Virus record (IMG/VR): IMGVR_UViG_3300028394_002328
Location: 1-64,000 of that record
Length of the DNA: 64,000 nucleotides
Direction: 5' to 3' (one strand)
Positions 32,708 through 64,000 of the stretch are shown here, piece by piece. Made by a program: the position numbers and the translations under genes. Position 1 is the stretch's first letter. Each line of letters opens with the position of its first letter. The notes beneath the pieces are model-generated. The model worked only from the letters and a program-made list of their open reading frames with translations, made no database searches and was not told where the DNA came from.

Positions 32708-33033
32708 GCGACGATGTAGTTATTATTTGGGAAGCACCCAAAATCATACCTCCTGAATTTCGGTTATATTACGACGAAAAGGGTAATGTTATTTGCTATA
32801 GTTGTCAACAGTTAGAAGGCAATTATATTGTAATTGATGCATTAACTTATGCTATAGCAAGACCTGATGTAAGAATCATTGATGGAAAAATTTCAACAGT
32901 AGCACCTGATGCAGTAGTATATAAATTAATGCCATCAGATGATGGTACTGCTTGTGCTTCAGAAGATATTAGCATTATTTCAGACGGGTCAATAGAAACA
33001 ACTAAGTGGAAATTAAGAATTTATGAGTTATGA
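32704..33033 (+). CDS. Hypothetical protein
   Basis: 109-aa ORF overlapping both neighbours. Confidence 0.6.
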   Translation: MSDDVVIIWEAPKIIPPEFRLYYDEKGNVICYSCQQLEGNYIVIDALTYAIARPDVRIIDGKISTVAPDAVVYKLMPSDDGTACASEDISIISDGSIETTKWKLRIYEL

Positions 33034-39085: not shown

Positions 39086-39087
39086 AA

Positions 39088-47526: not shown

Positions 47527-48336
47527 ATGACAGATTTATCTAACATTGATTTTGGTAAATATAAACGCTTCTTTGCGTTTGGATGCAGTTTTACTTCATA
47601 TCATTGGCCTACTTGGGCTGATGTATTAGCATCTGAAATGCCTAATGCTGAATTTTACAATTTTGGACATTGCGGTGGTGGTAATTCAATGATATCTAAT
47701 CGCATTGCTGAAGCAAATTGTAGATATAAATTTACCGATACTGATTTAGTTGTGCCGATGTGGACTACATTTTGTAGAGAAGATAGGTATAGAACTGGTC
47801 AATGGATGAGTACTGGTAATATGTTTAGCCAAAATGAATTTGATGAAGAATTTGTGAGAAAATATTGCGACCCAATTGGATATTTGTTAAGAGATTTAGC
47901 AATAATTACTGTTACAAGTACCTATCTTAAATCCTTGCCTTCTGATTCATTCATGTTAAATGGAGTACCTTATACTTATCAAATGGATATTGAAACCGCA
48001 CCATATCCAAAATTAAAAGAAATTTTGGAATTATATAAAGACACTATTAGCTTAACTCCACCTGCATTAGTTGATTTAGAATTAGGAGGTGAATTTAAAC
48101 ACGGTCATGAATACTCAAGGACGCATAATGGTGATTGGTACTTAGACTATCATCCAAACACATTGCATTATAATGGATACCTTAAAAAAATAGGTCTACC
48201 GTTAACATCTAAATCTTCAATGTATACAGAACATTCAATGACATTGTTAAAATCAACTAAAACAGAAGCACAATTGATCATCGCCTTTAATAAAATGGTT
48301 GACGATAGAAATACAAAATTAAAAAATCTTTTTTGA
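47527..48336 (+). CDS. SGNH/GDSL hydrolase-like protein
   Basis: 'FGCSFT', 'GGGNSMI' and 'DYHP' blocks. Confidence 0.6.
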   Translation: MTDLSNIDFGKYKRFFAFGCSFTSYHWPTWADVLASEMPNAEFYNFGHCGGGNSMISNRIAEANCRYKFTDTDLVVPMWTTFCREDRYRTGQWMSTGNMFSQNEFDEEFVRKYCDPIGYLLRDLAIITVTSTYLKSLPSDSFMLNGVPYTYQMDIETAPYPKLKEILELYKDTISLTPPALVDLELGGEFKHGHEYSRTHNGDWYLDYHPNTLHYNGYLKKIGLPLTSKSSMYTEHSMTLLKSTKTEAQLIIAFNKMVDDRNTKLKNLF

Positions 48337-48350
48337 ACTTAGGAATATTA

Positions 48351-50705: not shown

Positions 50706-50708
50706 TAA

Positions 50709-52958
50709 TTGGATTTTAACCTAACGTCATTAGCAGTAGATAAGTTAGTTCCTAAAGAACGGCCTACAGAAGATATTGCCGATGCCCGACATCGTAATAT
50801 GATGGAGGCTATAGCGCCCTATGCAAAGAAAACAGAACAAAAAAATCTAACACCTGTATATGTTAATTATAAAACCCGCAATACTAAATTAGTATTGGTA
50901 TTATGTCCTGAATGGAGTCCGTATATGCCGCCCTTTAGTCTAGCTAGACTAAGTGGTATAGCAAAAAGTGCAGGATATGAAACTACTATTATGGATTTGA
51001 ATGTTAGAGCCTATAACGAATATCGTAACGATTGGCAACCTAATAAAAAACTCCCATTCAGACTATGGGATCCTAGTAGCAGTTGGCACTGGCTAGGCGA
51101 GACTTATATGAATGATATTCATCCCGTATTAGAGCCTGTACTTAGTAAAGCAATAGATGATATAGTTGAACTAAATCCTGAAGTAGTTGGCTTTAGTATA
51201 TATTATATTAGTGAAGAGCCAACTAAGTGGATGTGTAAAGAACTCAAACGTAGACTGCCCAATGTAAAAATTGCAGTAGGTGGACCCAACGTACACAAGA
51301 GTTGGTTTAAAGTAGAACCATATTATGATTATGCAGTTGTGGGTGAAGGTGAGGCAAACTTATTAGTATTACTTGAAGAAGTAGAAAACGGTATCAACCA
51401 CAGTGAACCTAAGATTCTAGATCAACCCGAAGAGCAGCGTATCAACATAAATGGCTTGCCTATGCCAGACTATGAGTCTATAGATTTTAGTCAATATGAA
51501 TTGCCTAACGGAGTAAACACAGAAATTAGTAGGGGCTGTACAGCAAAATGTACTTTTTGCGAAGAGACACATTTTTGGCGATATCGTCAGCGTCAATCTG
51601 TTGATTTGATTACGGAAATCGAATGGCTATACTATAATAAGGGTACAGATGTTGTTTGGTTCATTGATAGTTTAGTCAATGGCAACTTAAAAGAGTTGAG
51701 GGCTTTTGTCAAAGGAGTCGCCGCTAAAGGTCTTAAGATTAAGTGGACAGGATATGCCCGCTGTGACGGCCGAATGGATCTAGAATACATGAAAGATTTA
51801 GCTGCCGGTGGTTGTATCATGTTTAACTATGGGATAGAATCCGGTAGTCAAAAAGTATTGGACGATATGGCTAAAGGCGTCACGATTGCAGAGATGGAAC
51901 AAAACTTCATCGATGGTAAAAAGGTGGGTATATGGGCTGCTACAAACTGGATTGTAGGATTCCCCACTGAAAATTTTCAAGACTATGCCGATAGCATGAC
52001 ACTACTATGGCGTATGCGTAATAATAATATTAATAACGCCGGCTTGGGAGTAGGTTATGGCTTGGGCCCTGAAACTATAGTAGGTCAAAATCCGCATAAA
52101 TTTAATATTAGTTGGCACAAGTATCAAGGACATTGGATTACAAAAGACTTGACAATGGGCGGTACTCATGTCATGACTAGAGTAAAAACGTTTCATATGT
52201 TTGCCGATTTTATACAGGGGTGTAGTGAAGTTCCAATTGGTTATCCAGTGAGACACAGTTTAGCAAGAGAACATTATAAAATAGAATTGAATGATCCTAA
52301 GTGTATCAAAGAAATTGAATATGAAAAATTTGATTATAATATTATTAAAGTAGATATTAATCCATTTGCTAATACATTAGTAAATGAAATGTGGCCATTC
52401 TTTCGAATGCTTTGGAAAACTAGAGGTGGATATAAAGCTGTAGTGAAATTTCATCCTGACATTGATTTAAAAGAGTTTGGCAGTCAGTTTGGACCCGGCA
52501 TGTATTATGCTACTTATAAGTTTGATATCACGGATGACGGCAAGTGGGATGCCGATTTTGATATTATTTTTAATCAAGTAGATAATATATTTGACGATAG
52601 AGAACGTCCGCCTCTAGGTAGAAAAGGTCCTTTTTACGCACAAGACTATAGTAGAATTCAAGCTAATACAGCCAAACGTGCCCGTAAATTAGCAAAGCCA
52701 ACATGGAGCGATGAAGAAGGTAGAGATGGACAAGATTTTACAGACTTGTTAAATGAAGAACAAATGTTAAATGAAACTATTGATTTCTCATTTAAGCTAC
52801 ATTGGGTTGAGTCAGGTGATTGGGGCAACTATGCCGACTATGAAGTTAAAGTTTCTGATACTACTACCGTTGTGATTCCTGAAAAGAAAGCAATGTCGGC
52901 TACAGAATTTGCTACAATTGACGTAACATCTATTAAAAAACGTGAACCCAATACTTGA
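50709..52958 (+). CDS. B12-binding-domain radical SAM enzyme (class B methyltransferase-like)
   Basis: 'PPFSLARL...VVGFS...IAVGGP...VVGEGE' cobalamin-binding domain; 'RGCTAKCTFC'; 'GIESGSQKVL..M.KG'; 'IVGFPTE'. Confidence 0.9.
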   Translation: MDFNLTSLAVDKLVPKERPTEDIADARHRNMMEAIAPYAKKTEQKNLTPVYVNYKTRNTKLVLVLCPEWSPYMPPFSLARLSGIAKSAGYETTIMDLNVRAYNEYRNDWQPNKKLPFRLWDPSSSWHWLGETYMNDIHPVLEPVLSKAIDDIVELNPEVVGFSIYYISEEPTKWMCKELKRRLPNVKIAVGGPNVHKSWFKVEPYYDYAVVGEGEANLLVLLEEVENGINHSEPKILDQPEEQRININGLPMPDYESIDFSQYELPNGVNTEISRGCTAKCTFCEETHFWRYRQRQSVDLITEIEWLYYNKGTDVVWFIDSLVNGNLKELRAFVKGVAAKGLKIKWTGYARCDGRMDLEYMKDLAAGGCIMFNYGIESGSQKVLDDMAKGVTIAEMEQNFIDGKKVGIWAATNWIVGFPTENFQDYADSMTLLWRMRNNNINNAGLGVGYGLGPETIVGQNPHKFNISWHKYQGHWITKDLTMGGTHVMTRVKTFHMFADFIQGCSEVPIGYPVRHSLAREHYKIELNDPKCIKEIEYEKFDYNIIKVDINPFANTLVNEMWPFFRMLWKTRGGYKAVVKFHPDIDLKEFGSQFGPGMYYATYKFDITDDGKWDADFDIIFNQVDNIFDDRERPPLGRKGPFYAQDYSRIQANTAKRARKLAKPTWSDEEGRDGQDFTDLLNEEQMLNETIDFSFKLHWVESGDWGNYADYEVKVSDTTTVVIPEKKAMSATEFATIDVTSIKKREPNT

Positions 52959-53526
52959 GTTTGAAACGGTTATAAAAGAATATTATAACAGCCCATATGC
53001 GGTTACAACTGATTGTTGTACCCACGCTATTGAACTATGTATTAGGTTATTAAAGCCAACTGAGGTATCATGTCCAAAACACACCTACCTAAGTGTTCCA
53101 ATGACATTTGAAAAATTAAATCTAGATTGGAGATTTAAAAATTTTAAATGGAATGATTATTATTATATAACTAATAATATTATTGATGCGGCAGTATATT
53201 GGAAGCCCGATGGATATATCCCTAATACATATATGTGCTTGTCATTTCAATTTAAAAAGCATTTAAATGTGGGTAGAGGTGGCATGATATTAACCGACGA
53301 TTATGAATCTTATAAAAAATTAAAAAAGATGAGTTATGATGGTAGGCTTCCCGATATTGCATGGGCTGAACAAGACGTAGACACATTGGGTTATCATTAT
53401 TATATGACACCTGAAACTGCTGAGTTGGGTTTAGATAGATTTCACGAAGTAAAGGACATTGAACCTAGACAATGGTCTTGGAAAGACTATCCCGACTTAA
53501 CAACAATGAGTGTATTCAAATGCTAA
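52942..53526 (+). CDS. DegT/DnrJ/EryC1/StrS-like PLP aminotransferase (short form)
   Basis: 'DCCTHAI', 'IIDAA', 'SFQFKKHL..GRGGMILTDD', 'GYHYYM'. Confidence 0.8.
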   Translation: MNPILEFETVIKEYYNSPYAVTTDCCTHAIELCIRLLKPTEVSCPKHTYLSVPMTFEKLNLDWRFKNFKWNDYYYITNNIIDAAVYWKPDGYIPNTYMCLSFQFKKHLNVGRGGMILTDDYESYKKLKKMSYDGRLPDIAWAEQDVDTLGYHYYMTPETAELGLDRFHEVKDIEPRQWSWKDYPDLTTMSVFKC

Positions 53527-54482
53527 GTAAAAACGAGTGGGATCCACTTAAAACCGTGATTGTTGGTATAGCAGATAATGCTACTAGACCAATTATATCT
53601 ACAAGCGTTAGGACTGTTAACTATGCTGATGTAAAAGATGTGAGTACGATTGAATGTGGTCCATATCCTGTACAAGTCATAGAAGAAGCGAATCAGGATT
53701 TAGAAACACTATGTGATTTTCTTAAGAAAGAAAACATTAAGGTATTACGCCCTGAAGCAAATCATCCTAGGTATTATAACTATTGCCCAAGAGATACGGT
53801 ATTAATACATGATGAATTAGTATTGGCTACACCAACTGCACTAAGTGAACGACGCCATGAATGGACTAGTTCTGCGAAGCATTTAAATATAGTTACAGTA
53901 GCACCTATACCAAATGATGATATAATTTATAATACTGAATGTATAGGTAATCCTGATATTTTAGCATTAAATGAAATAGATCCTTGTTTTGATGCTGCTA
54001 ATATTATTAGAGCAAATGAAGACCTTTATTATCTAGTTAGTAATACTGGTAATAAAAAAGGTGCAGAATACTTAAGGTCATTGGGCAAAACTGTACATAC
54101 TATTGAAAACGTATATAGTTATATTCATATTGATAGTACTATTGCATTTTTGCGTGAGGGTTTAATGTTGTTAAACCCAAAAAGAATTACGAATGTCAAA
54201 GAACAATTACCCAAATCATTGCATAATTGGGATATAATATGGGCTACTGAGCCAATAGATATTGGACATTACCCCGGTATATGCAATGCTAGTGTTTGGA
54301 TAAATGTAAATTTGTTATCTATCAATCCTAACTTAGTAGTTCTAGAAGAACACCAACACAATTTACGAATAGAATTAGAAAAATACGGTATTGAATCAGC
54401 AATGTTACCAATGCGTCATGCTAGAACATTAGGTGGTTGTTTTCACTGTGTGACATTAGATTTAGTTAGAGATGATAAATGA
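53520..54482 (+). CDS. Amidinotransferase (glycine/inosamine-phosphate amidinotransferase family)
   Basis: 'NEWDPLKTVIVG', 'CPRD', 'FDAAN', 'HIDST', 'GGCFHCVTLD' with Asp/His/Cys catalytic residues. Start 53520 preferred over 53472. Confidence 0.9.
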   Translation: MLSKNEWDPLKTVIVGIADNATRPIISTSVRTVNYADVKDVSTIECGPYPVQVIEEANQDLETLCDFLKKENIKVLRPEANHPRYYNYCPRDTVLIHDELVLATPTALSERRHEWTSSAKHLNIVTVAPIPNDDIIYNTECIGNPDILALNEIDPCFDAANIIRANEDLYYLVSNTGNKKGAEYLRSLGKTVHTIENVYSYIHIDSTIAFLREGLMLLNPKRITNVKEQLPKSLHNWDIIWATEPIDIGHYPGICNASVWINVNLLSINPNLVVLEEHQHNLRIELEKYGIESAMLPMRHARTLGGCFHCVTLDLVRDDK

Positions 54483-56200
54483 GTAAATGGCGTCGAGGAC
54501 ATGTTGGTAGATTTTGGTATACTGAAGAGGTTAAAAATCTTACATATATTAAACAACCGATAACTCAAGATGAAGTTGACCAATGGGTATCTAAAGGTTA
54601 TGATTACGTAAAGAGCTTTACGGGCAGCATGTATGATAATAAAAACCCAATGCCTGAATTTATTAATAGACTTAAAGATATCTTTTACAACTATAAAAAT
54701 CTTACGTTTACTTTTTATAAAATGAGTACATTGGAAATTATGCCTGAGCATTCTGATCACTATAATACATATATGAAATTATATGGGGCAGATTACAAAA
54801 ATGTACACCGCATCTTATTAATGTTAGAAGATTGGAAACCCGGACATTATTTAGAAATAGATGGCACTGGTATTATTAATTGGGTAGCAGGTGATTACTT
54901 TATTTGGGAAAATGATTGCAAACATGCTGCTGCTAATATAGGTGTAGAAGATAGATATACTTTACAGATTACGGCTGAAATACTTAGCGACAACTCAACT
55001 GACTATAAACTACATTGGTATAATATTCCTGATAGAGAATCAAAAACCGAATCATCTCAATACTATATGAATAGGGTACTAAACGGAGTAACTGATAATA
55101 TAAGAAATGAACCATTGTATATTTACATGCTTAATCAACAAATTGTTGAACTAGAAACAATAATACATGATCAAAGTACAGTACAGTATTTAAATGAAAA
55201 GGGTATTACATTTTATCTAACAGAACCATTATGCGGCTATACAAGATTACCTAGGAAACATACACTATCAATTTATTCAGAATTTAAAGGTGATGAAGAT
55301 TCTTCTGCTTTACGGGCAGACGAGTTAGATAGCATTAAAGAATATGTTATCAGAAATAAATTAACTAATGTTAATGTTTATACATGTGATTATGACGCTA
55401 AAACATATTATCCTTACTATAAATCTTTTATGAATATAGAAACAGATGATTTGTTTATTAGAACCATACCACAAAAAACAGTATTCCATACCAATGTCAA
55501 AGCTGCTTTTAATAAAAAATTTATTTGTTTAAATTGGAGATTTACTCCTCATAGGCAATTATTAGCCGCATACTTGTCTCAAAAATCTAGCACTATTAGT
55601 TGGTATTTTAGGGGAGATTTGCCTGTTGTAGGGCACTATAATTGGATTAGTATTTTTTCACTTAGAGACCCTAAATATTTTAATACTTTAATAGATGGCA
55701 TCACATATCTAAATGCTAACGCACCTCTGAGTGTTGACTTACCTGATGTAGAATCTATCTCTTTATATGATACTGCTCATGGCGAATTTATTCCTAATAG
55801 TCAAATACTGAATAATAGTTCCAATGAGATAATAGAAAATGCTTATTTGAATGTGTTTTGTGATATAGTTACTGAGTCTAGATTCGCTCAGCCAACTGGT
55901 AACTTTAGCGAAAAGGTATTTCACCCTATATGGTATAAAAAGCCTTTCGTATTGGCAGCGCCTCCTCATACACTAAAATATTTAAAAGAAGAAGGGTATA
56001 AAACCTTCAATGAATTTTGGGATGAAAGTTATGATGACTGTGAAAATCATGAAGAAAGATTAATGAAAATATTTGATGTAATAGATTTCATTGATAGTAA
56101 ATCTATAGACGAATTGCGTGAAATGTATGAGCAAATGAAGCCAATACTAAAACATAATTATGATTTAATAAAGCAAAAACTGCCCACAGTAGAAAAGTAA
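54479..56200 (+). CDS. 2OG-Fe(II)/cupin-type oxygenase-like domain fused to a GT10-like domain
   Basis: HxD...H motif ('MPEHSD...KHAAANIG..DRYTLQIT'); C-terminal 'DIVTES...FSEKVFHP...KPFV...DESYD'. Confidence 0.7.
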   Translation: MSKWRRGHVGRFWYTEEVKNLTYIKQPITQDEVDQWVSKGYDYVKSFTGSMYDNKNPMPEFINRLKDIFYNYKNLTFTFYKMSTLEIMPEHSDHYNTYMKLYGADYKNVHRILLMLEDWKPGHYLEIDGTGIINWVAGDYFIWENDCKHAAANIGVEDRYTLQITAEILSDNSTDYKLHWYNIPDRESKTESSQYYMNRVLNGVTDNIRNEPLYIYMLNQQIVELETIIHDQSTVQYLNEKGITFYLTEPLCGYTRLPRKHTLSIYSEFKGDEDSSALRADELDSIKEYVIRNKLTNVNVYTCDYDAKTYYPYYKSFMNIETDDLFIRTIPQKTVFHTNVKAAFNKKFICLNWRFTPHRQLLAAYLSQKSSTISWYFRGDLPVVGHYNWISIFSLRDPKYFNTLIDGITYLNANAPLSVDLPDVESISLYDTAHGEFIPNSQILNNSSNEIIENAYLNVFCDIVTESRFAQPTGNFSEKVFHPIWYKKPFVLAAPPHTLKYLKEEGYKTFNEFWDESYDDCENHEERLMKIFDVIDFIDSKSIDELREMYEQMKPILKHNYDLIKQKLPTVEK

Positions 56201-56221: not shown

Positions 56222-56320
56222 ATGTTTATATTTAAATGGATTAAGAATATTATCCGAGAATACAAATACCGTAAAAGAATTAAAGAATTACGCAAACGGG
56301 ATCCTTTCATATACAAATGA
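56222..56320 (+). CDS. Small basic peptide (32 aa) coupled to the carbamoyltransferase
   Basis: Translated by hand: MFIFKWIKNIIREYKYRKRIKELRKRDPFIYK*. AAGGAG RBS at 56209-56214; ATGA overlap with 56317. Confidence 0.75.
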   Translation: MFIFKWIKNIIREYKYRKRIKELRKRDPFIYK

Positions 56321-57798
56321 ACTATATAGGAATATCAGCAGGATTCCATGACGCTGCTATTAGTGTGGTAGACAATTCAGGCGACATACTATTTGCTGGG
56401 CATAGTGAACGGTATAGTAAGAAAAAACATGATAAAGACTTATGCCAAAAGTTACTTACGGACGCATTAAGTTACTGTAATTCAGAATCAATAGAGTATC
56501 ATTACTACGAAAGACCATGGTTAAAAGCACTTAGACAGTTACGTAGTGGTGAGGGTTTTGTTTGGCCAAGTTGGAAAAACTTATTAGGTCCCATCTATAA
56601 TCAAATGGGTAAACCAAAGATACATGTACATGGTCATCATCTATGCCATGCAGCAGCAGGATTTCAAACCAGTCCTTATAGTGACGCCACAGTTGTAATA
56701 ATTGACGCTATAGGTGAGTTTGACACTATGACGATTTGGGATGCTAGATATGACCTTATAACTGGCAAGGCTGCCTATGAGAAACTATGGAGTATGCAAT
56801 ATCCAAACAGTGTTGGCTTGTTCTATTCGGCCATGACTGAGCGAGTCGGATTGCGTCCACTAGATGAAGAATATATTCTTATGGGCATGGCTGCATATGG
56901 TCATCCTCATCATGTTGATAATATGTTTGATGCGTTAATAGATGACGATGACATATTGACCTTTAAACAGAACCTACATGTTGGGGTGAGCAAAGAATTT
57001 TTGAAAGATGCTAAAGAAACAGACATTGCTAGTAGTAGTCAACAGATAGCAGAGTATATGATAACTCTAGTTGTAAGCAAGGCTAAACGTTTAGGTAGAA
57101 GTAGAAATCTAGTATACGGTGGCGGTGTAGCATTGAACTGTTTAGCCAACAGATTATTAGGAAATATATATGAAAATATTTGGATTATGCCGAACCCTGG
57201 TGATGCAGGTAATAGCCTTGGTGCAGCATGTCTTGGCTATGGCACTAAACTTAATTGGAGTAATGCTTTTCTTGGCTATGATATCACTGGGGATTATCCT
57301 GTTCACAGGTTACTTGATAGTTTACTTACTGATAGGATGGTTGGTGTTGCGTCCGGTAGGGCAGAATTTGGACCGAGGGCCTTAGGTAATCGTAGTTTGT
57401 TGGCAGATCCTCGAGGTGATGATATCAAAGATAGAGTAAATGAAATTAAGCGTAGACAAAAGTTTAGACCATTCGCCCCTATCATTCTTGAGGAATATGT
57501 ACATGATTACTTTGACATGCCAAAGTCTTGGGGGAATAGTAGGTATATGCAAGTGATTGCTAACTGTAAATACCCTGATCAATTTCCTGCTATCGCACAT
57601 GCCGACAATACTAGTAGGGTACAAACAGTGCCCAAAGATGGATCGGGTATTAGAGAGTTATTAGAGAAATGGTACGTTATAACTGAATGTCCAATGTTGT
57701 TGAATACTAGTCTGAACATTCGTGGTGAGCCAATGGTCAATGACAGGACCGATGCTGACAGATTTGAAAAACTGTATGGGGTCAAAGTTCTGTCATAA
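56317..57798 (+). CDS. Carbamoyltransferase (NodU/CmcH/TobZ family)
   Basis: 'GFHDAA', 'HHLCHAA', 'DAIGE', 'MGMAAYG', 'GGVALNCLAN', 'EFGPRALGNRS', 'RQKFRPFAP', 'LLNTSLN'. Confidence 0.93.
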   Translation: MNYIGISAGFHDAAISVVDNSGDILFAGHSERYSKKKHDKDLCQKLLTDALSYCNSESIEYHYYERPWLKALRQLRSGEGFVWPSWKNLLGPIYNQMGKPKIHVHGHHLCHAAAGFQTSPYSDATVVIIDAIGEFDTMTIWDARYDLITGKAAYEKLWSMQYPNSVGLFYSAMTERVGLRPLDEEYILMGMAAYGHPHHVDNMFDALIDDDDILTFKQNLHVGVSKEFLKDAKETDIASSSQQIAEYMITLVVSKAKRLGRSRNLVYGGGVALNCLANRLLGNIYENIWIMPNPGDAGNSLGAACLGYGTKLNWSNAFLGYDITGDYPVHRLLDSLLTDRMVGVASGRAEFGPRALGNRSLLADPRGDDIKDRVNEIKRRQKFRPFAPIILEEYVHDYFDMPKSWGNSRYMQVIANCKYPDQFPAIAHADNTSRVQTVPKDGSGIRELLEKWYVITECPMLLNTSLNIRGEPMVNDRTDADRFEKLYGVKVLS

Positions 57799-57809
57799 GT
57801 AATTACATC

Positions 57810-60800
57810 ATGAGAGATGTATTTTATTACGGCGAAAAACCCAACGTTCATCCAAAAGAAAAATTTGCAACTTCAATAGAAGATGCTAGGCGTCAATCAA
57901 CGACAGAACATTTTTGGATAATCAATGAATTCTGTGACTATCGCAATTTTGATTGGGATTTTGATTTTGAATTCCTGCCCGATGAAGATGTATGGGCAGA
58001 AGACCATAACAATGTATGGCCTAGTCAACATCAAAAAGACAGTGGCACTTGGCTATGTTCAAAGAAAAACAGTGATATAATTATCTATCGTGCTGATGTT
58101 GACCCTGTTATTCGTAAGAATATAAAGAACGATCACTGGGTATTATTAGATTTAATTGATGAAAATAAATTTGATTTTAGTTGGCACCCTGATCCAACTG
58201 ATCCTCCTTATAATTATAAATGGGGATGTAAGTTTTTTCCAGTAGAATTACAGGCATGTTTAGAATATCGTATTGATGGTGCGTTCAAAACAAAATACAT
58301 GAAAGAAATTGTAGAATTGTTACCACAGTATGATAGATGGGTAGAAGTACAAGAGATAGATAAATTAGCATTTGATATGTCATGGAGACCCAATCCATTG
58401 GATCCCCCTATGAATTATATATGGGGTAACAAATATATTGATGGTAATCTACGTTCAACTCTAGAATACCGTATACCAGGTGCAATTGATACAAAATACA
58501 TGCCTGATTTAATTTCGGTAGTACCTGAATGGGATAAGTGGGTAGAAGTACAAAAAGTAAATAAGTCTACATTTGATTTTACATGGAGACCTGATCCACG
58601 TGAACCTGCGTATATCTATACTTGGGGTAACAAATATATCGATTCTGAGCTAAGGCCAACACTTGAATACCATTGTGAAGGGGCTACTGAACGCAAGTAT
58701 ATGTCTAATGATGTAGAGGTATTACCTGAATGGGATAAGTGGGAAATACTTCATCCTATAGATAAATCTACATTTAATTTTACATGGAGACCTGACCCTA
58801 GAGAACCAAATTTAAATTATGTATTTGGTAATAATCAGTATGACAGTACAAAAATGCCTACCATTATTTACAAAATGGAAGGTGCTACCGATGAAAAGCA
58901 TATGCCGAGTAATGCTAAATTGTTACCACAGCCTAACAGGTTTCAACATTTAGAAGATAGTTATGGCATAGATTATTCTTGGGTTCCTGATCCTACTAGT
59001 CCTCCTTATATATATGTTTGGGGTAATCAATGGAATAACCCTCAAGATAAAATATCTATTCAATATGTAGTTGAAGGAGCAACAGAATACAATTATATGG
59101 CAGAACGTGCTATTCGTAAGCCATGTAAAGATAATTGGGAAATACCTAACAATGTGGATATTACTGGGTTTGATTTTAGTTGGGAACCTAGTCCAGCAGA
59201 TCAACCTTATATCTATCAATTTGGCACTCAATGGCAAAAGACAGGTGGACCAAGATATCTAACACCTGGCGTACATAAAAATAGTGATGTTAAGTATGTT
59301 GATTTACAAAAAGTAAAAATGTTACCTAGTAAAGATAACTTCATTATCTTAGACAATGTTGTTGTAGATGATTTTGATTATAGTTGGCATTCCGATGAAA
59401 CAGAAGAGCCATACATATATGTATTTGGTAATAATTTATACTCTGCTGAAATTATGCCAACTATTCAGTATGTACCTAAAAATGCAGTCAGAGCAGCATC
59501 AGGCAAATCAATTGGACAAATAAAATATGTCAATGATATTATCGCTACGTTAGGAGAGAATAGAAATAATTGGGTAATTAATCAACCAATAGATGAAACT
59601 AAATTTGATTTTAGTTGGGTACCCAACCCCAAAGACCCAGCTTACATATACCGTTGGGGTAACAAATATATTTCTAATGTATATAAACCAACTATTGAAT
59701 ATATAGTTGAAGGTGCAACTGAAATAAAATACATGGACGACAGTGTTGCTGTATTACCCGAGTTTGATCGTTGGTATATCCCATCTAATATTGATGATAC
59801 TGGTTTTGATTATACATGGAGACCTGATCCACTAGAACCTGTATTAATTTGGCAATTTGGTACACAATGGCAAAAGACGGGCGGACCTAGATATACCATG
59901 CCTGGTGCCATTGAAGTCAAATATGTTAGTATACACAAGGTAAAAGCATTGCCTAATAAAGACAATTGGACTATACCTAAAAATATAGATATATCTAATT
60001 TTGATTTCAGTTGGCATCCTGATGATACTTCACCTCCTTACATATATAGGTTTCCCACTCAGTGGGCAATGAGTGGTGGTCCTATTTACACTGTAGTTGG
60101 AGCAACAGAAGTAAAGTATATAGATACCTTTAGGGCTAAAGCACTACCTAGTATAGATAATTGGGAATTCGATTCTAATAATATTGATTTGTCTAACTTT
60201 GACTTTAGTTGGCATCCATACGCAGAAGACGAGCCGTTCATATACCAATTTGGTACTCAATGGCAAAAGACAGGTGGTCCTAGATATTTAACTCCAGGAG
60301 TTCATAAAAATAGTCCTGTAAAATATATTGATACACGCATTATAAAAGCAAAAAGATTACCTAATAAAAATAATTTTATAATCATTGATAATAATGTAAT
60401 TGACAATTTTGACTACTCATGGCATCCTGATGAAACAGAGGAGCCATTTGTTTATATATTTGGTAACACTCAATATCCAGCCGAGATAATGCCTACAATA
60501 AAATATGTTGTAGAAGGTGCTACTCAAATAAAATATATTAATGATGTAGTTGCTGTACTAGGTGAAAATAAGAAAGTTTGGCATATCCCTGATAATATTG
60601 ATGATAGTTCATTTGATTATACTTGGGTGCCTAATCCCAAGGACCCGCCGTATATATACGAATTTGGTACGCACTGGCAAAAAACTGGTGGTCCAATCTA
60701 TGCTGTTAAAGATGCCACTGAAGTCAAATATATTGATTATCAAAAAGTAACCGCATTGCCTAATAAAGATAATTGGACTATACCTGGTAACGTGGATATA

Positions 60801-63800
60801 TCTGAATTTGATTTTAGTTGGCATCCAGATTCTACAAGTCCACCATATATCTATAGATTTCCCACTCAGTGGGCAATCAGTGGTGGTCCAACATATACTA
60901 TAATTGGTGCAACAGAGATAAAATATTTGGATACGATTAAGGTCAAAGCGCTACCTTGCAAAGATAATTGGGAATTTGATTCCAATATTATTGACAATGA
61001 AAACTTTGACTTTAGTTGGCATCCATATGCGGAAGACGAACCTTTTATATACCAATTTGGAACCCAGTGGCAAAAAACAGGTGGACCAAGGTATTTAACA
61101 CCTGGTATACATAAAAATAGCCCTGTAAAATATATTGACACTAGAATTATAAAAGCAAATAGATTACCTAATAAAGATAATTTTATCATCATTGATAATA
61201 ATGTAATTGATAGCTTTGATTACTCATGGCACCCTGATGAAACCGAAGAGCCATTTGTGTATATATTTGGTAACAATCAGTATCCAGCTGAGATAATGCC
61301 TACACTAAAATATGTTGTAGAAGGTGCTACAAAAATAAAGTATGTTAATGATATAGTTGCTATACTAGGTGAAAACAAAACTTATTGGGAAATACCTGAA
61401 GGTGTAGATGTAATTGAGTTTGATTTTAGTTGGGTACCTAATCCTAAAGATCCTGCATACATTTATGAATTTGGTACACAATGGAATGATAGGGGAGGTC
61501 CAAAATATGTTCCACCTAATAAAGGGCTTAGATTGGGTTCGGGTAAGATCATTGGTCAATATAAGTATGTCAGTGATCAAATTGCTACCTTGGGGGAAAA
61601 TAAAACAAATTGGATTATACCTGATAATATTGATATTACGGATTTTGATTTTAGTTGGGTTCCGCATCCCGATGACCCACCGTATATATATGAGTTTGGT
61701 ACACAGTGGCAAAAAACAGGTGGTCCAAAGTATGTAGTTTCAGGTTATACTGAAGTTAAATATGTTGCTACCCTTAAAGCTAGAATATTACCTAACAAAG
61801 ATAATTGGGAAGTACCTGAAAATATTGACAGTGCGAGTTTTGATTTTAGTTGGCATCCAGATGCAACTGAAGAACCCTATGTATATAAATTTGGAACCCA
61901 GTGGCAAAAAACAGGTGGACCAAGGTATTTAACACCTGGTATACATAAAAATAGCCCTGTAAAATATATTGATCCTAAAGTTCTTAGTAGTAAGAGATTG
62001 CCTAATAAAGAAAATTTTACTATAATAGATAATATTATTGTTGCTCATTTTGACTATAGTTGGCATCCTGACGAAACCGAAGAACTATATGTATATGTAT
62101 TTGGTAATAATTATTATCCAGCAGAGATAATGCCAACTGTTCAATACATACCTAAAGGTGCGATAATATCGGCATCAGGTAACCCCATTGAACAAATAAA
62201 ATATGTTAGTGGTGTGGTCGCTATACTAGGTGAAAATAAAACCAATTGGATAATACCTAAAGATATTGATCAACCCTCTTTTGATTTTAGTTGGGTTCCG
62301 CACCCAAACGATGAACCTTACATATATCAATTTGGTACACAACATCAAAAAACAGGTGGGCCGCAGTATGTACCAACTGCTATACCTAGGTTAGCATCAG
62401 GTTCTGCAATTGGTCAGGTTAAATATGTTGATGGTATAAAGGCTAAAAAGCTACCTAATAAAACTAATTGGACTAATCCTAGCAAAGTGGACGTTAGTAC
62501 ATTTGATTTCAGTTGGCACCCGGATGATACGTCACCTCCTTACATATATCAATTTGGTACATTATTAGATAGAGAAGATGGACCTAGGTATATGACTCCA
62601 AAGACTAATGGAGTGATTGTTTATTTGGAAAAAGTTGAAAAGGAAATTGAGGAAGTAGTAGAAGAAATTGTAAAAGACACTTTTCCCAAATATTATATTA
62701 CTACTACACTTGATGATTTAGTAAAACAACATCCAAATGAAATGTTTTGGGCATTAAACCCTGATTTGGATTATAGTGAATTTGATTTTGATTGGAGACC
62801 CAATATTGACAGATCACAATATGAGTCTGAATACGTTCATGCATTTGGTTCGAGTGAAAGTGAAAAAACACAAACTTATCTAGTTAATAGTACAATGTGG
62901 GAGAAAGGTCTTAGAGAATTAAATTGGGTTGTTGATAAAAAACTTGATGATGAAACCTTGTTTAAAATGTTCAAAAAGCCTGACATATTCTTCGTAGATA
63001 AAAGCAACCTAGAATCTCAAGCAAGGTACGAACAACTTAAAACTAAGTTTCCCAACATACAAAAAACACGTTACCTAAACAGTTGGGTCGATACTATCAA
63101 TCGTTGCATCAACAGGGCAAGTAATAACTTGTGTTGGATATTAAACAGCGAGCTAGACTATACTAATTTTGATTTTGATTATTATCCTAATCCATGGCAA
63201 ATGAAAATGGTCCATGTATTTGGAACACAATGGAGTCATTGGGGAACTACATTCATGATCAACCGTGAGACATTTGCTGAAGATACCAAGTGGATTAAAA
63301 TAATAGAGCATTTGAATAATCTTAATTTCGTAAAAGATAGAACTGCAATTGCTACTGATAATATATATGACATATATGTAGTAGACCATGGTAATAAAGA
63401 AACTGCAAAAGTTGTTCAACAATTAACCAATAAAGCATCAGGTAAATTAGTTAATACTATACCATACTCTGAAAATTATCTACTGACCTTTAAGAAATTA
63501 TTAAAACAACTTCTAGAAAAGAAAGAACACTATATTTGGATATGCAGTAGCATATGTGATTATAGCGATTTTGATTTTAGTTATGTTTGTGATCCTTTTG
63601 CCCGTGAGCAATTACATGTATTTCCTAGCGATAAACAAAAGTTAGGTGATACCTTTTTAGTTAATATTAATAAGTTTCGTGAATTAATTGATAATATGAC
63701 TTTATTAAATGAGTATAATAAAATCAATTATAACCAACATCAAACCGTTAAAAGATTAGATTCACCTACTATAATTACTAATTACGATTCGCATGTATTA

Positions 63801-64000
63801 AGTGTAATGGAAGACTTTGACTTCCCGTATGCTGTATTCTTATCAGAAGATAATAAAGATTTAAAAGTTACCGATGAAGAACCAATTAGTTTATGGAGTA
63901 GTGATACTAAGAACATTGTTATTACTAGTACTGGTGGAACAAGAATAGTAGTTCCTAAAGAAGCTAAAAATTATGTAGACACACAATTGTATGATTATCC
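57810..64000 (+). CDS. Giant tandem-repeat protein (>2,060 aa, 3'-truncated) with degenerate GT-A-like C-terminal domains; absent from the ORF track
   Basis: Translated by hand from ATG 57810 (MRDVFYYGEKPNVHPKEK...); I found no in-frame stop before the window end (...KNYVDTQLYDY). Confidence 0.88.
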   Translation, partial: MRDVFYYGEKPNVHPKEKFATSIEDARRQSTTEHFWIINEFCDYRNFDWDFDFEFLPDEDVWAEDHNNVWPSQHQKDSGTWLCSKKNSDIIIYRADVDPVIRKNIKNDHWVLLDLIDENKFDFSWHPDPTDPPYNYKWGCKFFPVELQACLEYRIDGAFKTKYMKEIVELLPQYDRWVEVQEIDKLAFDMSWRPNPLDPPMNYIWGNKYIDGNLRSTLEYRIPGAIDTKYMPDLISVVPEWDKWVEVQKVNKSTFDFTWRPDPREPAYIYTWGNKYIDSELRPTLEYHCEGATERKYMSNDVEVLPEWDKWEILHPIDKSTFNFTWRPDPREPNLNYVFGNNQYDSTKMPTIIYKMEGATDEKHMPSNAKLLPQPNRFQHLEDSYGIDYSWVPDPTSPPYIYVWGNQWNNPQDKISIQYVVEGATEYNYMAERAIRKPCKDNWEIPNNVDITGFDFSWEPSPADQPYIYQFGTQWQKTGGPRYLTPGVHKNSDVKYVDLQKVKMLPSKDNFIILDNVVVDDFDYSWHSDETEEPYIYVFGNNLYSAEIMPTIQYVPKNAVRAASGKSIGQIKYVNDIIATLGENRNNWVINQPIDETKFDFSWVPNPKDPAYIYRWGNKYISNVYKPTIEYIVEGATEIKYMDDSVAVLPEFDRWYIPSNIDDTGFDYTWRPDPLEPVLIWQFGTQWQKTGGPRYTMPGAIEVKYVSIHKVKALPNKDNWTIPKNIDISNFDFSWHPDDTSPPYIYRFPTQWAMSGGPIYTVVGATEVKYIDTFRAKALPSIDNWEFDSNNIDLSNFDFSWHPYAEDEPFIYQFGTQWQKTGGPRYLTPGVHKNSPVKYIDTRIIKAKRLPNKNNFIIIDNNVIDNFDYSWHPDETEEPFVYIFGNTQYPAEIMPTIKYVVEGATQIKYINDVVAVLGENKKVWHIPDNIDDSSFDYTWVPNPKDPPYIYEFGTHWQKTGGPIYAVKDATEVKYIDYQKVTALPNKDNWTIPGNVDISEFDFSWHPDSTSPPYIYRFPTQWAISGGPTYTIIGATEIKYLDTIKVKALPCKDNWEFDSNIIDNENFDFSWHPYAEDEPFIYQFGTQWQKTGGPRYLTPGIHKNSPVKYIDTRIIKANRLPNKDNFIIIDNNVIDSFDYSWHPDETEEPFVYIFGNNQYPAEIMPTLKYVVEGATKIKYVNDIVAILGENKTYWEIPEGVDVIEFDFSWVPNPKDPAYIYEFGTQWNDRGGPKYVPPNKGLRLGSGKIIGQYKYVSDQIATLGENKTNWIIPDNIDITDFDFSWVPHPDDPPYIYEFGTQWQKTGGPKYVVSGYTEVKYVATLKARILPNKDNWEVPENIDSASFDFSWHPDATEEPYVYKFGTQWQKTGGPRYLTPGIHKNSPVKYIDPKVLSSKRLPNKENFTIIDNIIVAHFDYSWHPDETEELYVYVFGNNYYPAEIMPTVQYIPKGAIISASGNPIEQIKYVSGVVAILGENKTNWIIPKDIDQPSFDFSWVPHPNDEPYIYQFGTQHQKTGGPQYVPTAIPRLASGSAIGQVKYVDGIKAKKLPNKTNWTNPSKVDVSTFDFSWHPDDTSPPYIYQFGTLLDREDGPRYMTPKTNGVIVYLEKVEKEIEEVVEEIVKDTFPKYYITTTLDDLVKQHPNEMFWALNPDLDYSEFDFDWRPNIDRSQYESEYVHAFGSSESEKTQTYLVNSTMWEKGLRELNWVVDKKLDDETLFKMFKKPDIFFVDKSNLESQARYEQLKTKFPNIQKTRYLNSWVDTINRCINRASNNLCWILNSELDYTNFDFDYYPNPWQMKMVHVFGTQWSHWGTTFMINRETFAEDTKWIKIIEHLNNLNFVKDRTAIATDNIYDIYVVDHGNKETAKVVQQLTNKASGKLVNTIPYSENYLLTFKKLLKQLLEKKEHYIWICSSICDYSDFDFSYVCDPFAREQLHVFPSDKQKLGDTFLVNINKFRELIDNMTLLNEYNKINYNQHQTVKRLDSPTIITNYDSHVLSVMEDFDFPYAVFLSEDNKDLKVTDEEPISLWSSDTKNIVITSTGGTRIVVPKEAKNYVDTQLYDY
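58140..62620 (+). repeat. ~22 tandem coding repeats of ~195-231 bp (consensus W.IP..ID...FDFSWHP....PYIY.FG.QWQKTGGP.Y......KY......LP.K)
   Basis: FD(F/Y)(S/T)W motif starts at about 58170, 58371, 58572, 58773, 58968, 59169, 59373, 59604, 59805, 60000, 60198, 60408, 60612, 60807, 61005, 61215, 61419, 61644, 61839, 62049, 62280 and 62502. Confidence 0.88.
61054..61972 (+). repeat. 85-bp perfect direct repeat (61054-61138 and 61888-61972)
   Basis: Identical sequence 'aatttggaacccagtggcaaaaaacagg...ccctgtaaaatatattga' at both sites. Confidence 0.85.

What the first reader, a model, noticed from the sequence alone, without database searches (positions are those of the whole stretch)
57810..64000. 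Hidden >2,060-aa protein with ~22 tandem W/P/Y-rich ~66-aa repeats, missed by the ORF track
Seen: one open frame runs off the window end and contains a repeat (FDFSWHP-x4-PYIY-x-FG-TQWQKTGGP-x-Y...KY...LP-x-K-x-NW) that I cannot assign to a known family. Two subtypes are interleaved, 'TQWQKTGGP' and 'GN..Y.AEIMPT'. Inference: conserved aromatic residues and position in the cluster suggest a multivalent carbohydrate-binding scaffold, a molecular ruler, or a multi-site substrate for the tailoring enzymes.
Basis: partly seen in the sequence, partly recalled or inferred. Interest (0 to 1): 0.85.

Follow-up and report, generated by a model that had tools for sequence, protein, structure and literature searches.

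The report
Giant phage glycosyltransferase-like repeat protein
A 2,298-residue protein of an uncultured freshwater jumbo phage joins a predicted rigid rod of 22 copies of a previously undescribed 66-residue repeat to several glycosyltransferase-like domains, and it sits in a conserved sugar-tailoring gene cluster, so it probably builds, carries or binds an unusual phage-made glycan.

Summary
One stop-free frame runs from the ATG at 57810 off the window end. On the parent 335-kb IMG/VR contig it ends 235 codons later, giving 2,298 aa. It holds 22 tandem 65-77-aa repeats (per-unit HMM E 4e-20 to 8e-32) of two subtypes. Pfam, PHROGs, NCBIfam, PDB sequence search and Foldseek do not recognise the repeat.

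There is a truncated one at the N-terminus, three compact ones after the repeats, and a full one at the C-terminus, partly beyond the window (VIA Z 9.7-10.8). The repeat itself is homologous to the half of those modules that follows the DxD strand (hhalign 95% and 91%).

The array is predicted as a rigid head-to-tail rod. Relatives carry 16-40 repeats, and short 600-700-aa forms have few or none. The family is found only in viral contigs; the one cultured relative is Ralstonia jumbo phage RsoM2USA, which has stand-alone domains.

A carbamoyltransferase gene lies directly upstream in 53 of 65 loci, with a UDP-glucose dehydrogenase fusion, a B12-radical SAM enzyme, an aminotransferase and GT10-like paralogs nearby.

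Best reading: a giant glycosyltransferase-family protein of a phage glycan pathway, with the repeats as scaffold, ruler or acceptor. Function is inferred, not shown.

The parts
57810..64000 (+). Giant ORF of 2,298 aa, 268.9 kDa, pI 5.0, with no TM segment or signal peptide. 2,063 aa lie in the window; the ORF continues to contig position 64706 (L001:10001-16897).
57810..58145 (+). N-terminal cap, aa 1-112: a truncated GT-A-like half-domain ending in the FDWDFDF motif. It is highly conserved across the family.
   Evidence: VIA-align aa 1-103 against GT-A folds, Z 4-5.7. ESM Atlas shape hits to GT2, nucleotidyltransferases and DUF5672. Module HMMs hit aa 32-99 at E 2e-5 to 8e-4. Conservation.
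58146..62684 (+). 22 tandem 65-77-aa all-beta repeats, aa 113-1625. There are two subtypes and one 807-nt four-unit higher-order duplication (about 59854-61467). The array is predicted as a rigid head-to-tail rod.
   Evidence: AF2 pLDDT 92 overall and 95-97 in the repeats, pTM 0.68. Head-to-tail docking in trans, score 0.49 against a best control of 0.00. hhalign to GT-A modules m1 and m2 at 95% and 91%.
62685..62975 (+). Module m1, aa 1626-1722: a partial GT-A-like module containing FWALN..DY..FDFDW. It follows an acidic linker at about aa 1600-1625.
62976..63365 (+). Module m2, aa 1723-1852: a compact GT-A-like module. At the DxD position N1779-S-E1781-L-D1783-Y is nearly invariant, an ExD-like motif.
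   Evidence: VIA Z 9.7 to IspDF over model 237-361. Conservation 115-119 of 119 sequences.
63366..63755 (+). Module m3, aa 1853-1982: a compact GT-A-like module with S-S-V-C-D at the DxD position.
   Evidence: VIA Z 9-9.9 to IspDF, GlmU and IspD over model 367-503.
63756..64000 (+). Beta-rich connector, aa 1983-2072, cut by the window end. The terminal full-size GT-A domain m4 (aa 2073-2298) lies outside the window at L001:16217-16897.
   Evidence: m4: VIA Z 10.8 to B4GALNT1, 10.4 to a Leptospira GT, 10.0 to WrtF, 9.5 to ThuS, 8.3 to PBCV-1 A64R. Invariant D2079, S-N-G-E2087, R2110, G2116-R2117 and K2139; D2112 in 116 of 119.
56317..57798 (+). Carbamoyltransferase of the NodU/CmcH type, directly upstream of the giant ORF.
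   Evidence: Pfam Carbam_trans_C E 1.4e-46 and Carbam_trans_N E 6.8e-35. It ends less than 400 nt upstream on the same strand in 53 of 65 loci.
48333..56200 (+). Co-conserved sugar-tailoring genes: a UDP-glucose 6-dehydrogenase fused to a GT10-like domain (48333-50705); a B12-binding radical SAM enzyme (50709-52958); a DegT-like aminotransferase in two overlapping ORFs (52942-53526 and 53472-54482); and a 573-aa protein with a GT10-like C-terminal half (54479-56200).
   Evidence: Present in 24-44 of 57 loci that have at least 9 kb of upstream sequence.
33023..33973 (+). Stand-alone 316-aa paralog of the m4 GT-A domain. It is extremely conserved and lies just before the radical SAM array.
   Evidence: m4 HMM E 4e-15. 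More than 8,000 homologs, the top 120 at 82% identity or more. Ortholog RsoM2USA ORF350 at 39% identity, E 4e-64, next to radical SAM ORF349.
33967..41327 (+). Six tandem radical SAM paralogs, four of them with SPASM-like hits.
   Evidence: A similar array lies directly upstream of the distant family member P0340.

Best explanation
The gene encodes a giant, soluble protein of the glycosyltransferase (GT-A) family. It is the last gene of a conserved run of same-strand glycan genes in a freshwater jumbo myovirus.

Shown by computation:
- The architecture is a truncated GT-A cap, then 22 copies of a 66-aa beta unit, then three compact GT-A-like modules, a connector and a full-size GT-A domain.
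- The repeat unit is homologous to the half of the GT-A-like modules that follows the DxD strand.
- The units are predicted to dock head to tail into a rigid rod.
- The C-terminal 673 aa are the most conserved part, at 54-67% identity in most of the 117 full-length homologs compared (86-94% in three close relatives), while repeat number varies from 16 to 40. Short relatives of 600-700 aa have few or no repeats.

Inferred:
- The adjacent enzymes make unusual nucleotide sugars. These enzymes are a UDP-sugar dehydrogenase, an aminotransferase, B12-radical SAM and SAM C-methyltransferases, an epimerase and a carbamoyltransferase.
- The C-terminal modules transfer or polymerise these sugars. Module m2 has a conserved N-S-E-x-D motif. 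Module m4 has a conserved nucleotide-side Asp (D2112, 116/119) and an invariant Lys in place of DxD, which would suggest metal-independent catalysis.
- The acceptor is a phage-made glycoconjugate, most likely on a virion structure or on this protein itself.
- The repeat rod is non-catalytic. It serves as a spacer or ruler, or as a track that binds or carries the glycan.
For: Fold of the C-terminal region: the AF2 model of aa 1483-2298 has pLDDT 86.5. The Foldseek top hit is the two-GT-A chondroitin polymerase K4CP (E 3.7e-6), followed by GT2 enzymes. VIA-align places three separate GT-A matches at Z 9.7-10.8; 74 chains reach Z>=8, and every one of the 50 rows listed is a GT-A-type glycosyltransferase or nucleotidyltransferase. 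In BFVD, after two family members, the hits are multi-domain viral glycosyltransferases, including the mycobacteriophage Che8 GT.

Origin of the repeat: hhalign of the repeat profile against m1 and m2 gives 95% (E 3e-8) and 91% (E 1e-6). The reciprocal module HMMs also hit the repeats.

Rigid rod: pLDDT 95-97 and pTM 0.68 over 590 aa. Separate fragments dock head to tail with ipSAE 0.49 against 0.00 for controls.

Active-site-like conservation.

Context: a carbamoyltransferase directly upstream in 53 of 65 loci; B12-radical SAM in 42 of 57; the UDP-glucose dehydrogenase fusion in 36 of 57. Distant family members sit next to radical SAM/SPASM arrays, DegT, epimerase, methyltransferases and UDP-glucose dehydrogenase. 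RsoM2USA homologs flank a radical SAM gene.

Family architecture: 16-40 repeats in the large forms and short forms with few.

Protein properties: soluble, with no TM segment or signal peptide.
Against: - No sequence-level match to any curated GT family.
- A canonical DxD is absent from four of the five modules, so some or all may be pseudo-enzymes.
- The compact modules m2 and m3 (about 130 aa) match nucleotidyltransferases as well as they match GTs.
- The cluster already holds at least five GT10-like paralogs and a stand-alone GT-A, so the giant protein need not be the transferase.
- Nothing shows the acceptor, the sugar, or whether the protein is in the virion.
- No model coordinates were available, so rod geometry and surface conservation were not examined.
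Confidence: 0.45

Rival explanations
1. The protein is a structural fibre or adhesin made of pseudo-enzymes. The GT-A-like modules no longer catalyse and instead bind a sugar, nucleotide sugar or host polysaccharide. The repeat rod is a virion-attached stalk whose length varies between phages.
For: - Canonical DxD is missing in most modules.
- Repeat number varies from 16 to 40, as in stalks and adhesins.
- The rod is predicted to be rigid.
- The gene lies downstream of a baseplate hub, a baseplate wedge and a 6,344-aa probable fibre.
- A precedent for a non-catalytic GT fold appears among the VIA hits: the vaccinia H3 envelope protein.
Against: - The C-terminal modules are the most conserved part and keep invariant polar and charged residues at nucleotide-pocket positions.
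- No lateral trimer is predicted, only head-to-tail contacts.
- No PHROG or Pfam structural family matches.
- The tight coupling to a carbamoyltransferase points to chemistry rather than adhesion alone.
Confidence: 0.2
2. The repeat array is a multi-site acceptor. It would be glycosylated, for example at the conserved Ser/Thr of FDF[S/T]W or at conserved Tyr, by the cluster's GT10-like enzymes or by its own GT-A modules, as glycogenin primes itself. Alternatively it would be cross-linked by the radical SAM/SPASM enzymes. Either way the result is a heavily modified fibre.
For: - The Ser/Thr in FDF[S/T]W and several Tyr and Trp residues are conserved in all units.
- At least five GT10-like paralogs and one stand-alone GT-A lie in the cluster.
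- Radical SAM/SPASM arrays co-occur with the family in the window, next to P0340 and in RsoM2USA.
- From general knowledge, repeat adhesins with dedicated GT clusters are known (serine-rich repeat proteins, AIDA-I).
Against: - The units are predicted as tightly folded domains at pLDDT 95-97, unlike the disordered or extended acceptor repeats and RiPP precursors.
- The conserved motif is also kept in the full GT-A modules, which suggests a structural role.
- Short family members with few repeats keep the same gene neighbours.
- There is no direct evidence of modification.
Confidence: 0.15
3. The protein is a DNA-hypermodifying glycosyltransferase. Its GT-A modules would glycosylate hydroxymethylated bases in phage DNA, and the repeat rod would track along DNA.
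For: - Phage GT-A-like (JGT-like) enzymes glycosylate 5hmC, and many lie near thymidylate-synthase-like genes (bioRxiv 10.1101/2023.12.21.572611, read).
- Here ThyA and DHFR lie about 7-8 kb downstream and near P0340.
Against: - The ThyA homolog is a strong canonical match (E 6e-108) paired with DHFR, as expected for ordinary dTMP synthesis.
- No TET/5mYOX, hydroxymethylase or base-modifying kinase was seen in the 74 kb examined.
- The R...DDD...EDY/F motifs of the DNA GT-A enzymes are not present.
- The protein is acidic, pI 5.0.
Confidence: 0.07
4. The feature is not a real gene: a chance open frame or an assembly artefact of repeats.
For: Repeats can be misassembled. A few low-depth alternative joints appear in metagenome contigs.
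Against: - 2,298 stop-free codons in 33% GC DNA.
- 741 large homologs with a conserved architecture.
- Independent runs hold 84-97% of the words of the same sequence, with no indels at depths of 130-250.
- The models are confident.
Confidence: 0.01

Closest known systems
Multi-domain viral and bacterial GT-A glycosyltransferases: E. coli K4 chondroitin polymerase K4CP, human CHSY3-CHPF, chlorovirus PBCV-1 A64R, and Mimiviridae or CeV 'multiple glycosyltransferase domain' proteins
   Same: Several GT-A-fold modules lie in one soluble chain. K4CP and CHSY3-CHPF align across two modules of the model. Virus-encoded, host-independent glycan synthesis is the shared theme.
   Different: There is no sequence match to GT2 or any Pfam GT family. 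DxD is non-canonical or absent in most modules. The modules m2 and m3 are unusually small, about 130 aa. None of these relatives has a 16-40-unit array of half-modules. Activity has not been tested.
Ralstonia jumbo phage RsoM2USA ORF347/348/350, the only cultured relative
   Same: ORF348 matches the terminal GT-A domain (28% identity, E 2e-14). ORF350 is the ortholog of the window's stand-alone 316-aa paralog (39% identity, E 4e-64). Both flank a radical SAM gene, and the genome size is similar at 344 kb.
   Different: The domains there are separate proteins of 230-320 aa. There is no repeat array and no giant fusion. All are annotated as hypothetical and are not mentioned in the phage's paper.
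Enzymes with aromatic-rich repeat arrays: the CROP repeats of large clostridial glucosyltransferases, the YG/cell-wall-binding repeats of GH70 glucansucrases, and choline-binding repeats
   Same: This is an analogy from general knowledge only. In these proteins a sugar-handling catalytic domain is joined to a long, length-variable array of aromatic-rich repeats that binds carbohydrate.
   Different: There is no sequence or fold relation: Pfam gave no hits and Foldseek gave no hit below E 1. Here the unit is 66 aa rather than about 20-30 aa and derives from the enzyme fold itself. Carbohydrate binding is untested.
PKD and He_PIG Ig-like repeats
   Same: Only a motif-level resemblance: FDFSW.P compared with the WDFGDG-type motif. 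The PKD domain 6aem scores E 0.065. A bacterial He_PIG/Big_9 protein matched profile positions 4-30 at E 9e-8.
   Different: The matches cover less than half of the unit. The unit is 66 aa against 85-90 aa. No Ig-like fold was found by Foldseek or VIA. Rejected as a relative.

Membership tests
GT-A fold nucleotide-diphospho-sugar transferase superfamily | Rossmann-like alpha/beta/alpha fold with a central mixed sheet | tested here: met
   AF2 pLDDT 86.5. VIA Z 10.8, 9.9 and 9.7 for three separate modules; 74 chains reach Z>=8 and all 50 listed rows are GT-A-type folds. Foldseek probability 0.99 to GT2 enzymes. The N-terminal cap is only partial, Z 4-5.7.
GT-A fold nucleotide-diphospho-sugar transferase superfamily | DxD (or ExD) metal and diphosphate-binding motif at the end of strand 4 | tested here: inconclusive
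   m2 has a nearly invariant N-S-E-L-D, which is ExD-like. m4 has F-A-K with an invariant Lys and no acid. m3 has S-S-V-C-D, m1 has N-x-x-I-D, and the N-terminal cap has N-E-F. Motif positions were assigned from sequence and secondary structure, not from a superposition.
GT-A fold nucleotide-diphospho-sugar transferase superfamily | Glycosyl transfer from a nucleotide sugar | not testable with these tools
   This needs an enzyme assay.
CAZy GT2 / Pfam Glycos_transf_2 | Sequence match to the family profile | tested here: not met
   No Pfam family at E<=1 for aa 1-2063 or at E<=0.01 for aa 1501-2298. No NCBIfam match. The protein is not filed as GT2.
Known repeat families (PKD/Ig-like, CW_binding/CROP, FG-GAP, YD, beta-propeller, beta-solenoid) | Profile or fold match of the 66-aa unit | tested here: not met
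   Pfam, PHROGs and NCBIfam gave none. Best PDB profile hit E 0.065. Best Foldseek PDB hit E 1.7. VIA wide found nothing for aa 113-590. ESM Atlas named clusters scored 0.51 or less.
Phage tail fibre or spike | Parallel homotrimer and a match to a structural family | tested here: not met
   Three copies of four units docked only head to tail, with no lateral interface. No structural PHROG matches. Virion presence was not tested.
RiPP-like precursor for radical SAM/SPASM maturases | Leader or recognition element plus unstructured core peptides next to the maturase | tested here: inconclusive
   Radical SAM/SPASM arrays co-occur with the family. But the units are predicted as folded domains, no leader is evident, and modification cannot be tested here.
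Phage DNA glycosyltransferases (JGT-like GT-A) | R...DDD...EDY/F motifs and linkage to 5mYOX or hydroxymethylase genes | tested here: not met
   The motifs are absent (compared with the description read). Only a canonical ThyA plus DHFR lies nearby. The rest of the 335-kb genome was not examined.

The most novel reading that the evidence does not exclude
The 16-40-unit rod of duplicated GT-A half-domains is a built-in ruler or carrier. It would either set the length or position of a glycan that the C-terminal modules and the cluster's other transferases assemble, or be the self-primed acceptor of that glycan, as in glycogenin. The product would be a giant carbamoylated glyco-fibre on a jumbo phage. 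Either case would be a new principle for phage glycan assembly and a new protein fold used for it.
Probability: 0.15. Interest if true: 0.85.

Novelty: new variant of a known kind. Interest (0 to 1): 0.65.

Why it matters
Phage-made glycans are only beginning to be recognised, for example on mycobacteriophage virions and on hypermodified DNA.

This is an abundant family found only in viral contigs. There are 741 large homologs, and two lake metagenomes hold the sequence at word depths of 130-250. Yet it is absent from 50,697 GenBank phage records except for stand-alone domains in one phage.

The family couples GT-A modules to a repeat whose predicted fold has no solved relative. It is embedded in a conserved island of sugar-tailoring enzymes, radical SAM enzymes and GT10-like enzymes.

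Why that is useful:
- It is a concrete entry point to an unknown, chemically elaborate glycoconjugate of freshwater jumbo phages.
- It is a clear example of a new repeat domain arising by duplication of half an enzyme fold.
- Because repeat number varies naturally, the ruler idea can be tested.

Tried and rejected
- **Family libraries.** Pfam, PHROGs and NCBIfam on the whole protein and its C-terminus gave nothing. The only PHROG hit was an 'endolysin' stretch of 30 residues at E 0.006, taken as noise.
- **Tandem repeat finder.** It found no DNA tandem repeat because the copies are too diverged.
- **PDB by sequence.** Only designed 'Pizza' propellers matched, over 25-32 residues with no significant stretch. 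Rejected.
- **Fold searches of the repeat model.** Foldseek against the PDB found no match. VIA wide matched only the N-terminal cap.
- **GenBank phages.** Megablast and tblastn with the window part found no match.
- **GTDB species genomes.** No relative was found.
- **Search with the terminal domain alone.** The 244-aa query was swamped by fragments of the same giant proteins from short contigs and gave no annotation.
- **Search with the 316-aa paralog.** Thousands of unnamed near-identical phage proteins were returned.
- **PKD/He_PIG resemblance.** Rejected as motif-level only.
- **Trimeric-fibre test.** The 'supports binding' verdict reflects head-to-tail re-creation of the repeat junction, not oligomerisation.
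- **Other ORFs.** Pfam found nothing useful on the 6,344-aa ORF. PDB sequence search on the 573-aa ORF and a profile of the five paralogs found nothing.
- **Literature.** Searches on jumbo phages, RsoM2USA, huge-phage protein surveys and aquatic 'moraphages' found no description of this protein.

Full report
**1. Observation**

The frame 57768-63998 (+) holds 2,077 codons without a stop. The first ATG is at 57810, 11 nt after the TAA of the upstream carbamoyltransferase gene. The ORF list omitted it because that tool does not list ORFs that run off an end of the source.

A scan of IMG/VR returned the window's own contig, IMGVR_UViG_3300028394_002328 (335,035 bp). The window is its first 64 kb. 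Read on that contig, the ORF ends 235 codons beyond the window, giving a protein of 2,298 aa (L001:10001-16897). It is 268.9 kDa with pI 5.0 and has no hydrophobic segment or signal peptide.

Anchoring on the FDFSW motif gives 22 tandem units of 65-77 aa at aa 113-1625.
- W13 and Y41 are invariant. F9, D10, P15, Y24, G27, K50 and Y51 are conserved at 90% or more.
- A profile of the units scores each at E 4e-20 to 8e-32. That match is by construction, but the same profile finds 16-40 units in each of 120 homologs.
- Twelve units are of the GTQW..GGP subtype and ten of the GN..Y..(M)PT subtype. Units 1-5 are all the latter.

At the DNA level the copies are 60-78% identical. One four-unit (807-nt) duplication is 76-88% identical, and TRF sees nothing.

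At least six freshwater metagenome runs hold 84-97% of the sampled words of the stretch. Contigs of four runs lay on it without any indel, at word depths of 130-250 in two of them. The gene is therefore real and the description is accurate.

**2. What the protein is made of**

No curated library recognises any part of it: Pfam at E<=1, PHROGs, NCBIfam and PDB by sequence all fail.

An AF2 model of aa 1483-2298, built on 119 homologous sequences, is confident (pLDDT 86.5).
- The best Foldseek PDB hit is the two-GT-A-domain chondroitin polymerase K4CP (E 3.7e-6). GT2 enzymes follow: WrtF, SunS/ThuS, PcManGT, RmlT and PBCV-1 A64R.
- VIA-align resolves three separate GT-A matches. Model 592-745 (aa 2074-2227) matches B4GALNT1 at Z 10.8, a Leptospira GT at 10.4 and WrtF at 10.0. 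Model 367-503 matches IspDF and GlmU at Z 9-9.9. Model 237-361 matches IspDF at Z 9.7. CHSY3-CHPF and K4CP span two modules.
- In the viral structure library the hits, after two uncharacterised family members from uncultured Caudovirales, are multi-domain glycosyltransferases of giant viruses and phages, including the mycobacteriophage Che8 GT.

The N-terminal 103 aa also match GT-A folds, but weakly and only as a half-domain (Z 4-5.7).

The resulting architecture is:
- a cap at aa 1-112;
- 22 repeats at aa 113-1625, ending in an acidic linker;
- m1 at aa 1626-1722 (partial);
- m2 at aa 1723-1852;
- m3 at aa 1853-1982;
- a beta-rich connector at aa 1983-2072;
- m4 at aa 2073-2298, a full GT-A domain plus a helical tail, outside the window.

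**3. What the repeat is**

hhalign of the repeat profile against the C-terminal region aligns the unit to the segment of m1 and m2 that begins right after the DxD-position strand. This is the D-Y-x-x-F-D-F-x-W-x-P ... V-H-V-F-G stretch. Probabilities are 95% (E 3e-8) and 91% (E 1e-6), with weaker matches to m4 and m3. HMMs of m1, m2 and m3 reciprocally hit most of the repeat units and the N-terminal cap. The repeat is thus a duplicated half of the family's own GT-A-like module, without the nucleotide-binding half.

An AF2 model of aa 1-590 (the cap plus seven units) is very confident: pLDDT 92 overall, 95-97 in the repeats, and all-beta. Its pTM of 0.68 is too high for independent beads on a string.

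Neither Foldseek (best E 1.7) nor VIA wide finds a solved relative of the repeat region. The ESM Atlas returns only in-family viral clusters by shape, and no named cluster above 0.51 by features.

I also folded three copies of a four-unit fragment together. They scored 0.49 against 0.00 for the best of three controls. That mark was reached by 20 of 30 solved homodimers and 1 of 23 solved monomers in the tool's calibration, which holds only roughly here. The interface, however, is strictly head to tail: residues 314-356 of one copy contact 520-590 of the next. This re-creates the junction between neighbouring repeats and is not a lateral trimer. I read it as support for a specific, rigid inter-unit interface, meaning a rod, and as no support for a trimeric fibre.

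**4. The family**

There are 741 large homologs of 1.1-3.6 kaa in metagenomes. The 120 listed are 37-62% identical over the query (leaving out the window's own protein), and none is named.

Every homolog checked keeps the cap and the C-terminal 673 aa. That region is 54-67% identical in most of the 117 full-length homologs compared, and 86-94% in three close relatives. Repeat number ranges from 16 to 40, with a median of 24.

An exhaustive profile search of 1.84 billion representatives finds only 180 clusters at E<=1e-3. Among them are short forms of 600-700 aa with the cap, a few modules, the connector and m4, and forms of about 1,500 aa with up to 13 full modules. The repeat array is therefore an expansion within an older multi-module family whose constant part is the connector plus m4.

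The family was found in 78 IMG/VR loci and in none of 185,579 GTDB species genomes. Among 50,697 GenBank phage records, only Ralstonia jumbo phage RsoM2USA (344 kb) has relatives. Its ORF348 (233 aa) resembles m4. Its ORF350 is the ortholog of the window's stand-alone 316-aa m4 paralog (33023-33973). Both flank a radical SAM gene.

**5. Context**

The window starts with a baseplate hub/lysozyme gene, a baseplate wedge gene (E 4e-258) and a 6,344-aa ORF. Then come, in order:
- the 316-aa GT-A paralog;
- six radical SAM paralogs, four with SPASM-like hits;
- a C-methyltransferase and an epimerase on the minus strand;
- a UDP-glucose 6-dehydrogenase fusion, a B12-radical SAM enzyme and a DegT-like aminotransferase in two ORFs;
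- a 573-aa protein, a carbamoyltransferase, and then the giant gene.

Five proteins in and around the cluster share a domain of about 330 aa. Its nearest named Atlas clusters are all GT10 fucosyltransferase-like, at score 0.78, which is a lead only.

Across related loci:
- the carbamoyltransferase ends less than 400 nt upstream on the same strand in 53 of 65 loci;
- the B12-radical SAM enzyme is present in 42 of 57, the 573-aa ORF in 44 of 57, and the dehydrogenase fusion in 36 of 57;
- a MoxR ATPase is present in 38 of 55 loci that hold at least 6 kb of downstream sequence.

A distant 1,536-aa relative lies directly after four or five radical SAM/SPASM genes and before DegT, epimerase, ThyA and DHFR. 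A 602-aa relative lies beside methyltransferases and a UDP-glucose dehydrogenase.

**6. Mechanism**

Shown by computation: the modular anatomy, the origin of the repeat, the predicted rod, the conservation pattern and the gene linkage.

Inferred: the neighbours make modified nucleotide sugars (oxidised to a uronic acid, aminated, C-methylated, carbamoylated). The C-terminal modules then bind and transfer them.

Conservation at pocket positions supports function.
- m2 keeps N1779-S-E1781-L-D1783-Y in 115-119 of 119 sequences, an ExD-like motif.
- m4 keeps D2079, S-N-G-E2087, R2110, G2116-R2117 and K2139 in all 119, and D2112 in 116 of 119. The Lys sits where DxD normally is.
- From general knowledge, some metal-independent GT-A enzymes use basic residues there.

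The rod, which lacks the nucleotide half, would be non-catalytic: a spacer or ruler, a glycan-binding track, or the acceptor. I put 0.45 on 'active glycosyltransferase-family protein of this pathway with a scaffold rod'.

The rivals are:
- a pseudo-enzyme fibre or adhesin (0.2);
- a multi-site acceptor (0.15);
- a DNA glycosyltransferase (0.07), weakened by the canonical ThyA plus DHFR pair, the absence of the JGT-type motifs and the acidic pI;
- an artefact (0.01).

**7. Comparison and novelty**

The protein works most like the multi-GT-A enzymes of bacteria and large viruses. It fails the sequence test for GT2 and has mostly non-canonical DxD positions, so I file it only under the GT-A fold superfamily.

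The 66-aa repeat matches no known repeat family or solved fold. I found no paper describing the family.

The verdict is a new variant of a known kind, with a genuinely new repeat domain.

**8. Limits**

- No model coordinates were available, so rod geometry, surface conservation and exact active-site superposition were not examined.
- Only 74 kb of the 335-kb genome was read.
- Nothing here shows expression, virion location, the sugar or the acceptor.

Noticed in passing
window 8717-27751 (+): A 6,344-aa ORF directly follows the baseplate hub (1084-4827) and baseplate wedge (5337-8708) genes. Pfam finds nothing above noise. It is probably a giant fibre or baseplate-attached protein. RsoM2USA has a 2,540-aa ORF (ORF361) about 10 kb upstream of its GT-A/radical SAM block.
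   Followed up: partly
window 33967-41327 (+): Six tandem radical SAM paralogs. In four of them (35370-40365) the SPASM-like hit lies N-terminal (about residues 14-85) to the radical SAM core (about 126-304). This is the reverse of the usual order. Similar arrays sit next to distant relatives of the giant protein.
   Followed up: partly
window 33023-33973 (+): A 316-aa stand-alone paralog of the terminal GT-A domain is extraordinarily conserved. More than 8,000 database proteins match, and the top 120 are 82-100% identical. The giant protein is far less conserved. Its RsoM2USA ortholog, ORF350, sits beside a radical SAM gene.
   Followed up: partly
window 41314-42543, 46382-47524, 49650-50705, 55400-56200; L001:17701-18852: Five paralogs of a domain of about 330 aa (BLASTP E 1e-5 to 1e-77). 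Two are fused behind other domains, one of them a UDP-glucose dehydrogenase. Pfam and PDB sequence searches find nothing. The nearest named ESM Atlas clusters are all GT10 fucosyltransferase-like (score 0.78). In other phages the same fold is fused to epimerases or methyltransferases.
   Followed up: partly
window 52942-53526 and 53472-54482 (+): The DegT-like aminotransferase signal lies in a 194-aa ORF that overlaps a 336-aa ORF with no Pfam hit. Both pieces are conserved in about 24-28 related loci. This could be a split gene, a frameshift site or two distinct genes.
   Followed up: no
window 58600-62350: Metagenome contigs show a few low-depth alternative joints inside the repeat array, skipping 424, 2,295 or 3,713 nt at depth 3-8 against 130-160. 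They could be variants in repeat number, related strains or assembly-graph chimeras.
   Followed up: no
L001:19828-22299 and 24189-25570 (contig 67637-70108 and 71998-73379): Downstream of the giant gene lie a MoxR-type AAA ATPase and a DUF2201 metallopeptidase/VWA gene pair, then DHFR and a canonical thymidylate synthase (E 6e-108). The ATPase and VWA pair is conserved in 33-38 of 55 loci.
   Followed up: partly
profile of window 58146-62684 against protein P0381: A bacterial He_PIG/Big_9 Ig-repeat protein matches positions 4-30 of the repeat profile in eight stretches (E 9e-8), and a PKD domain (6aem) scores E 0.065. The FDFSW.P motif resembles the PKD WDFGDG-type motif, but no fold similarity was found.
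   Followed up: yes
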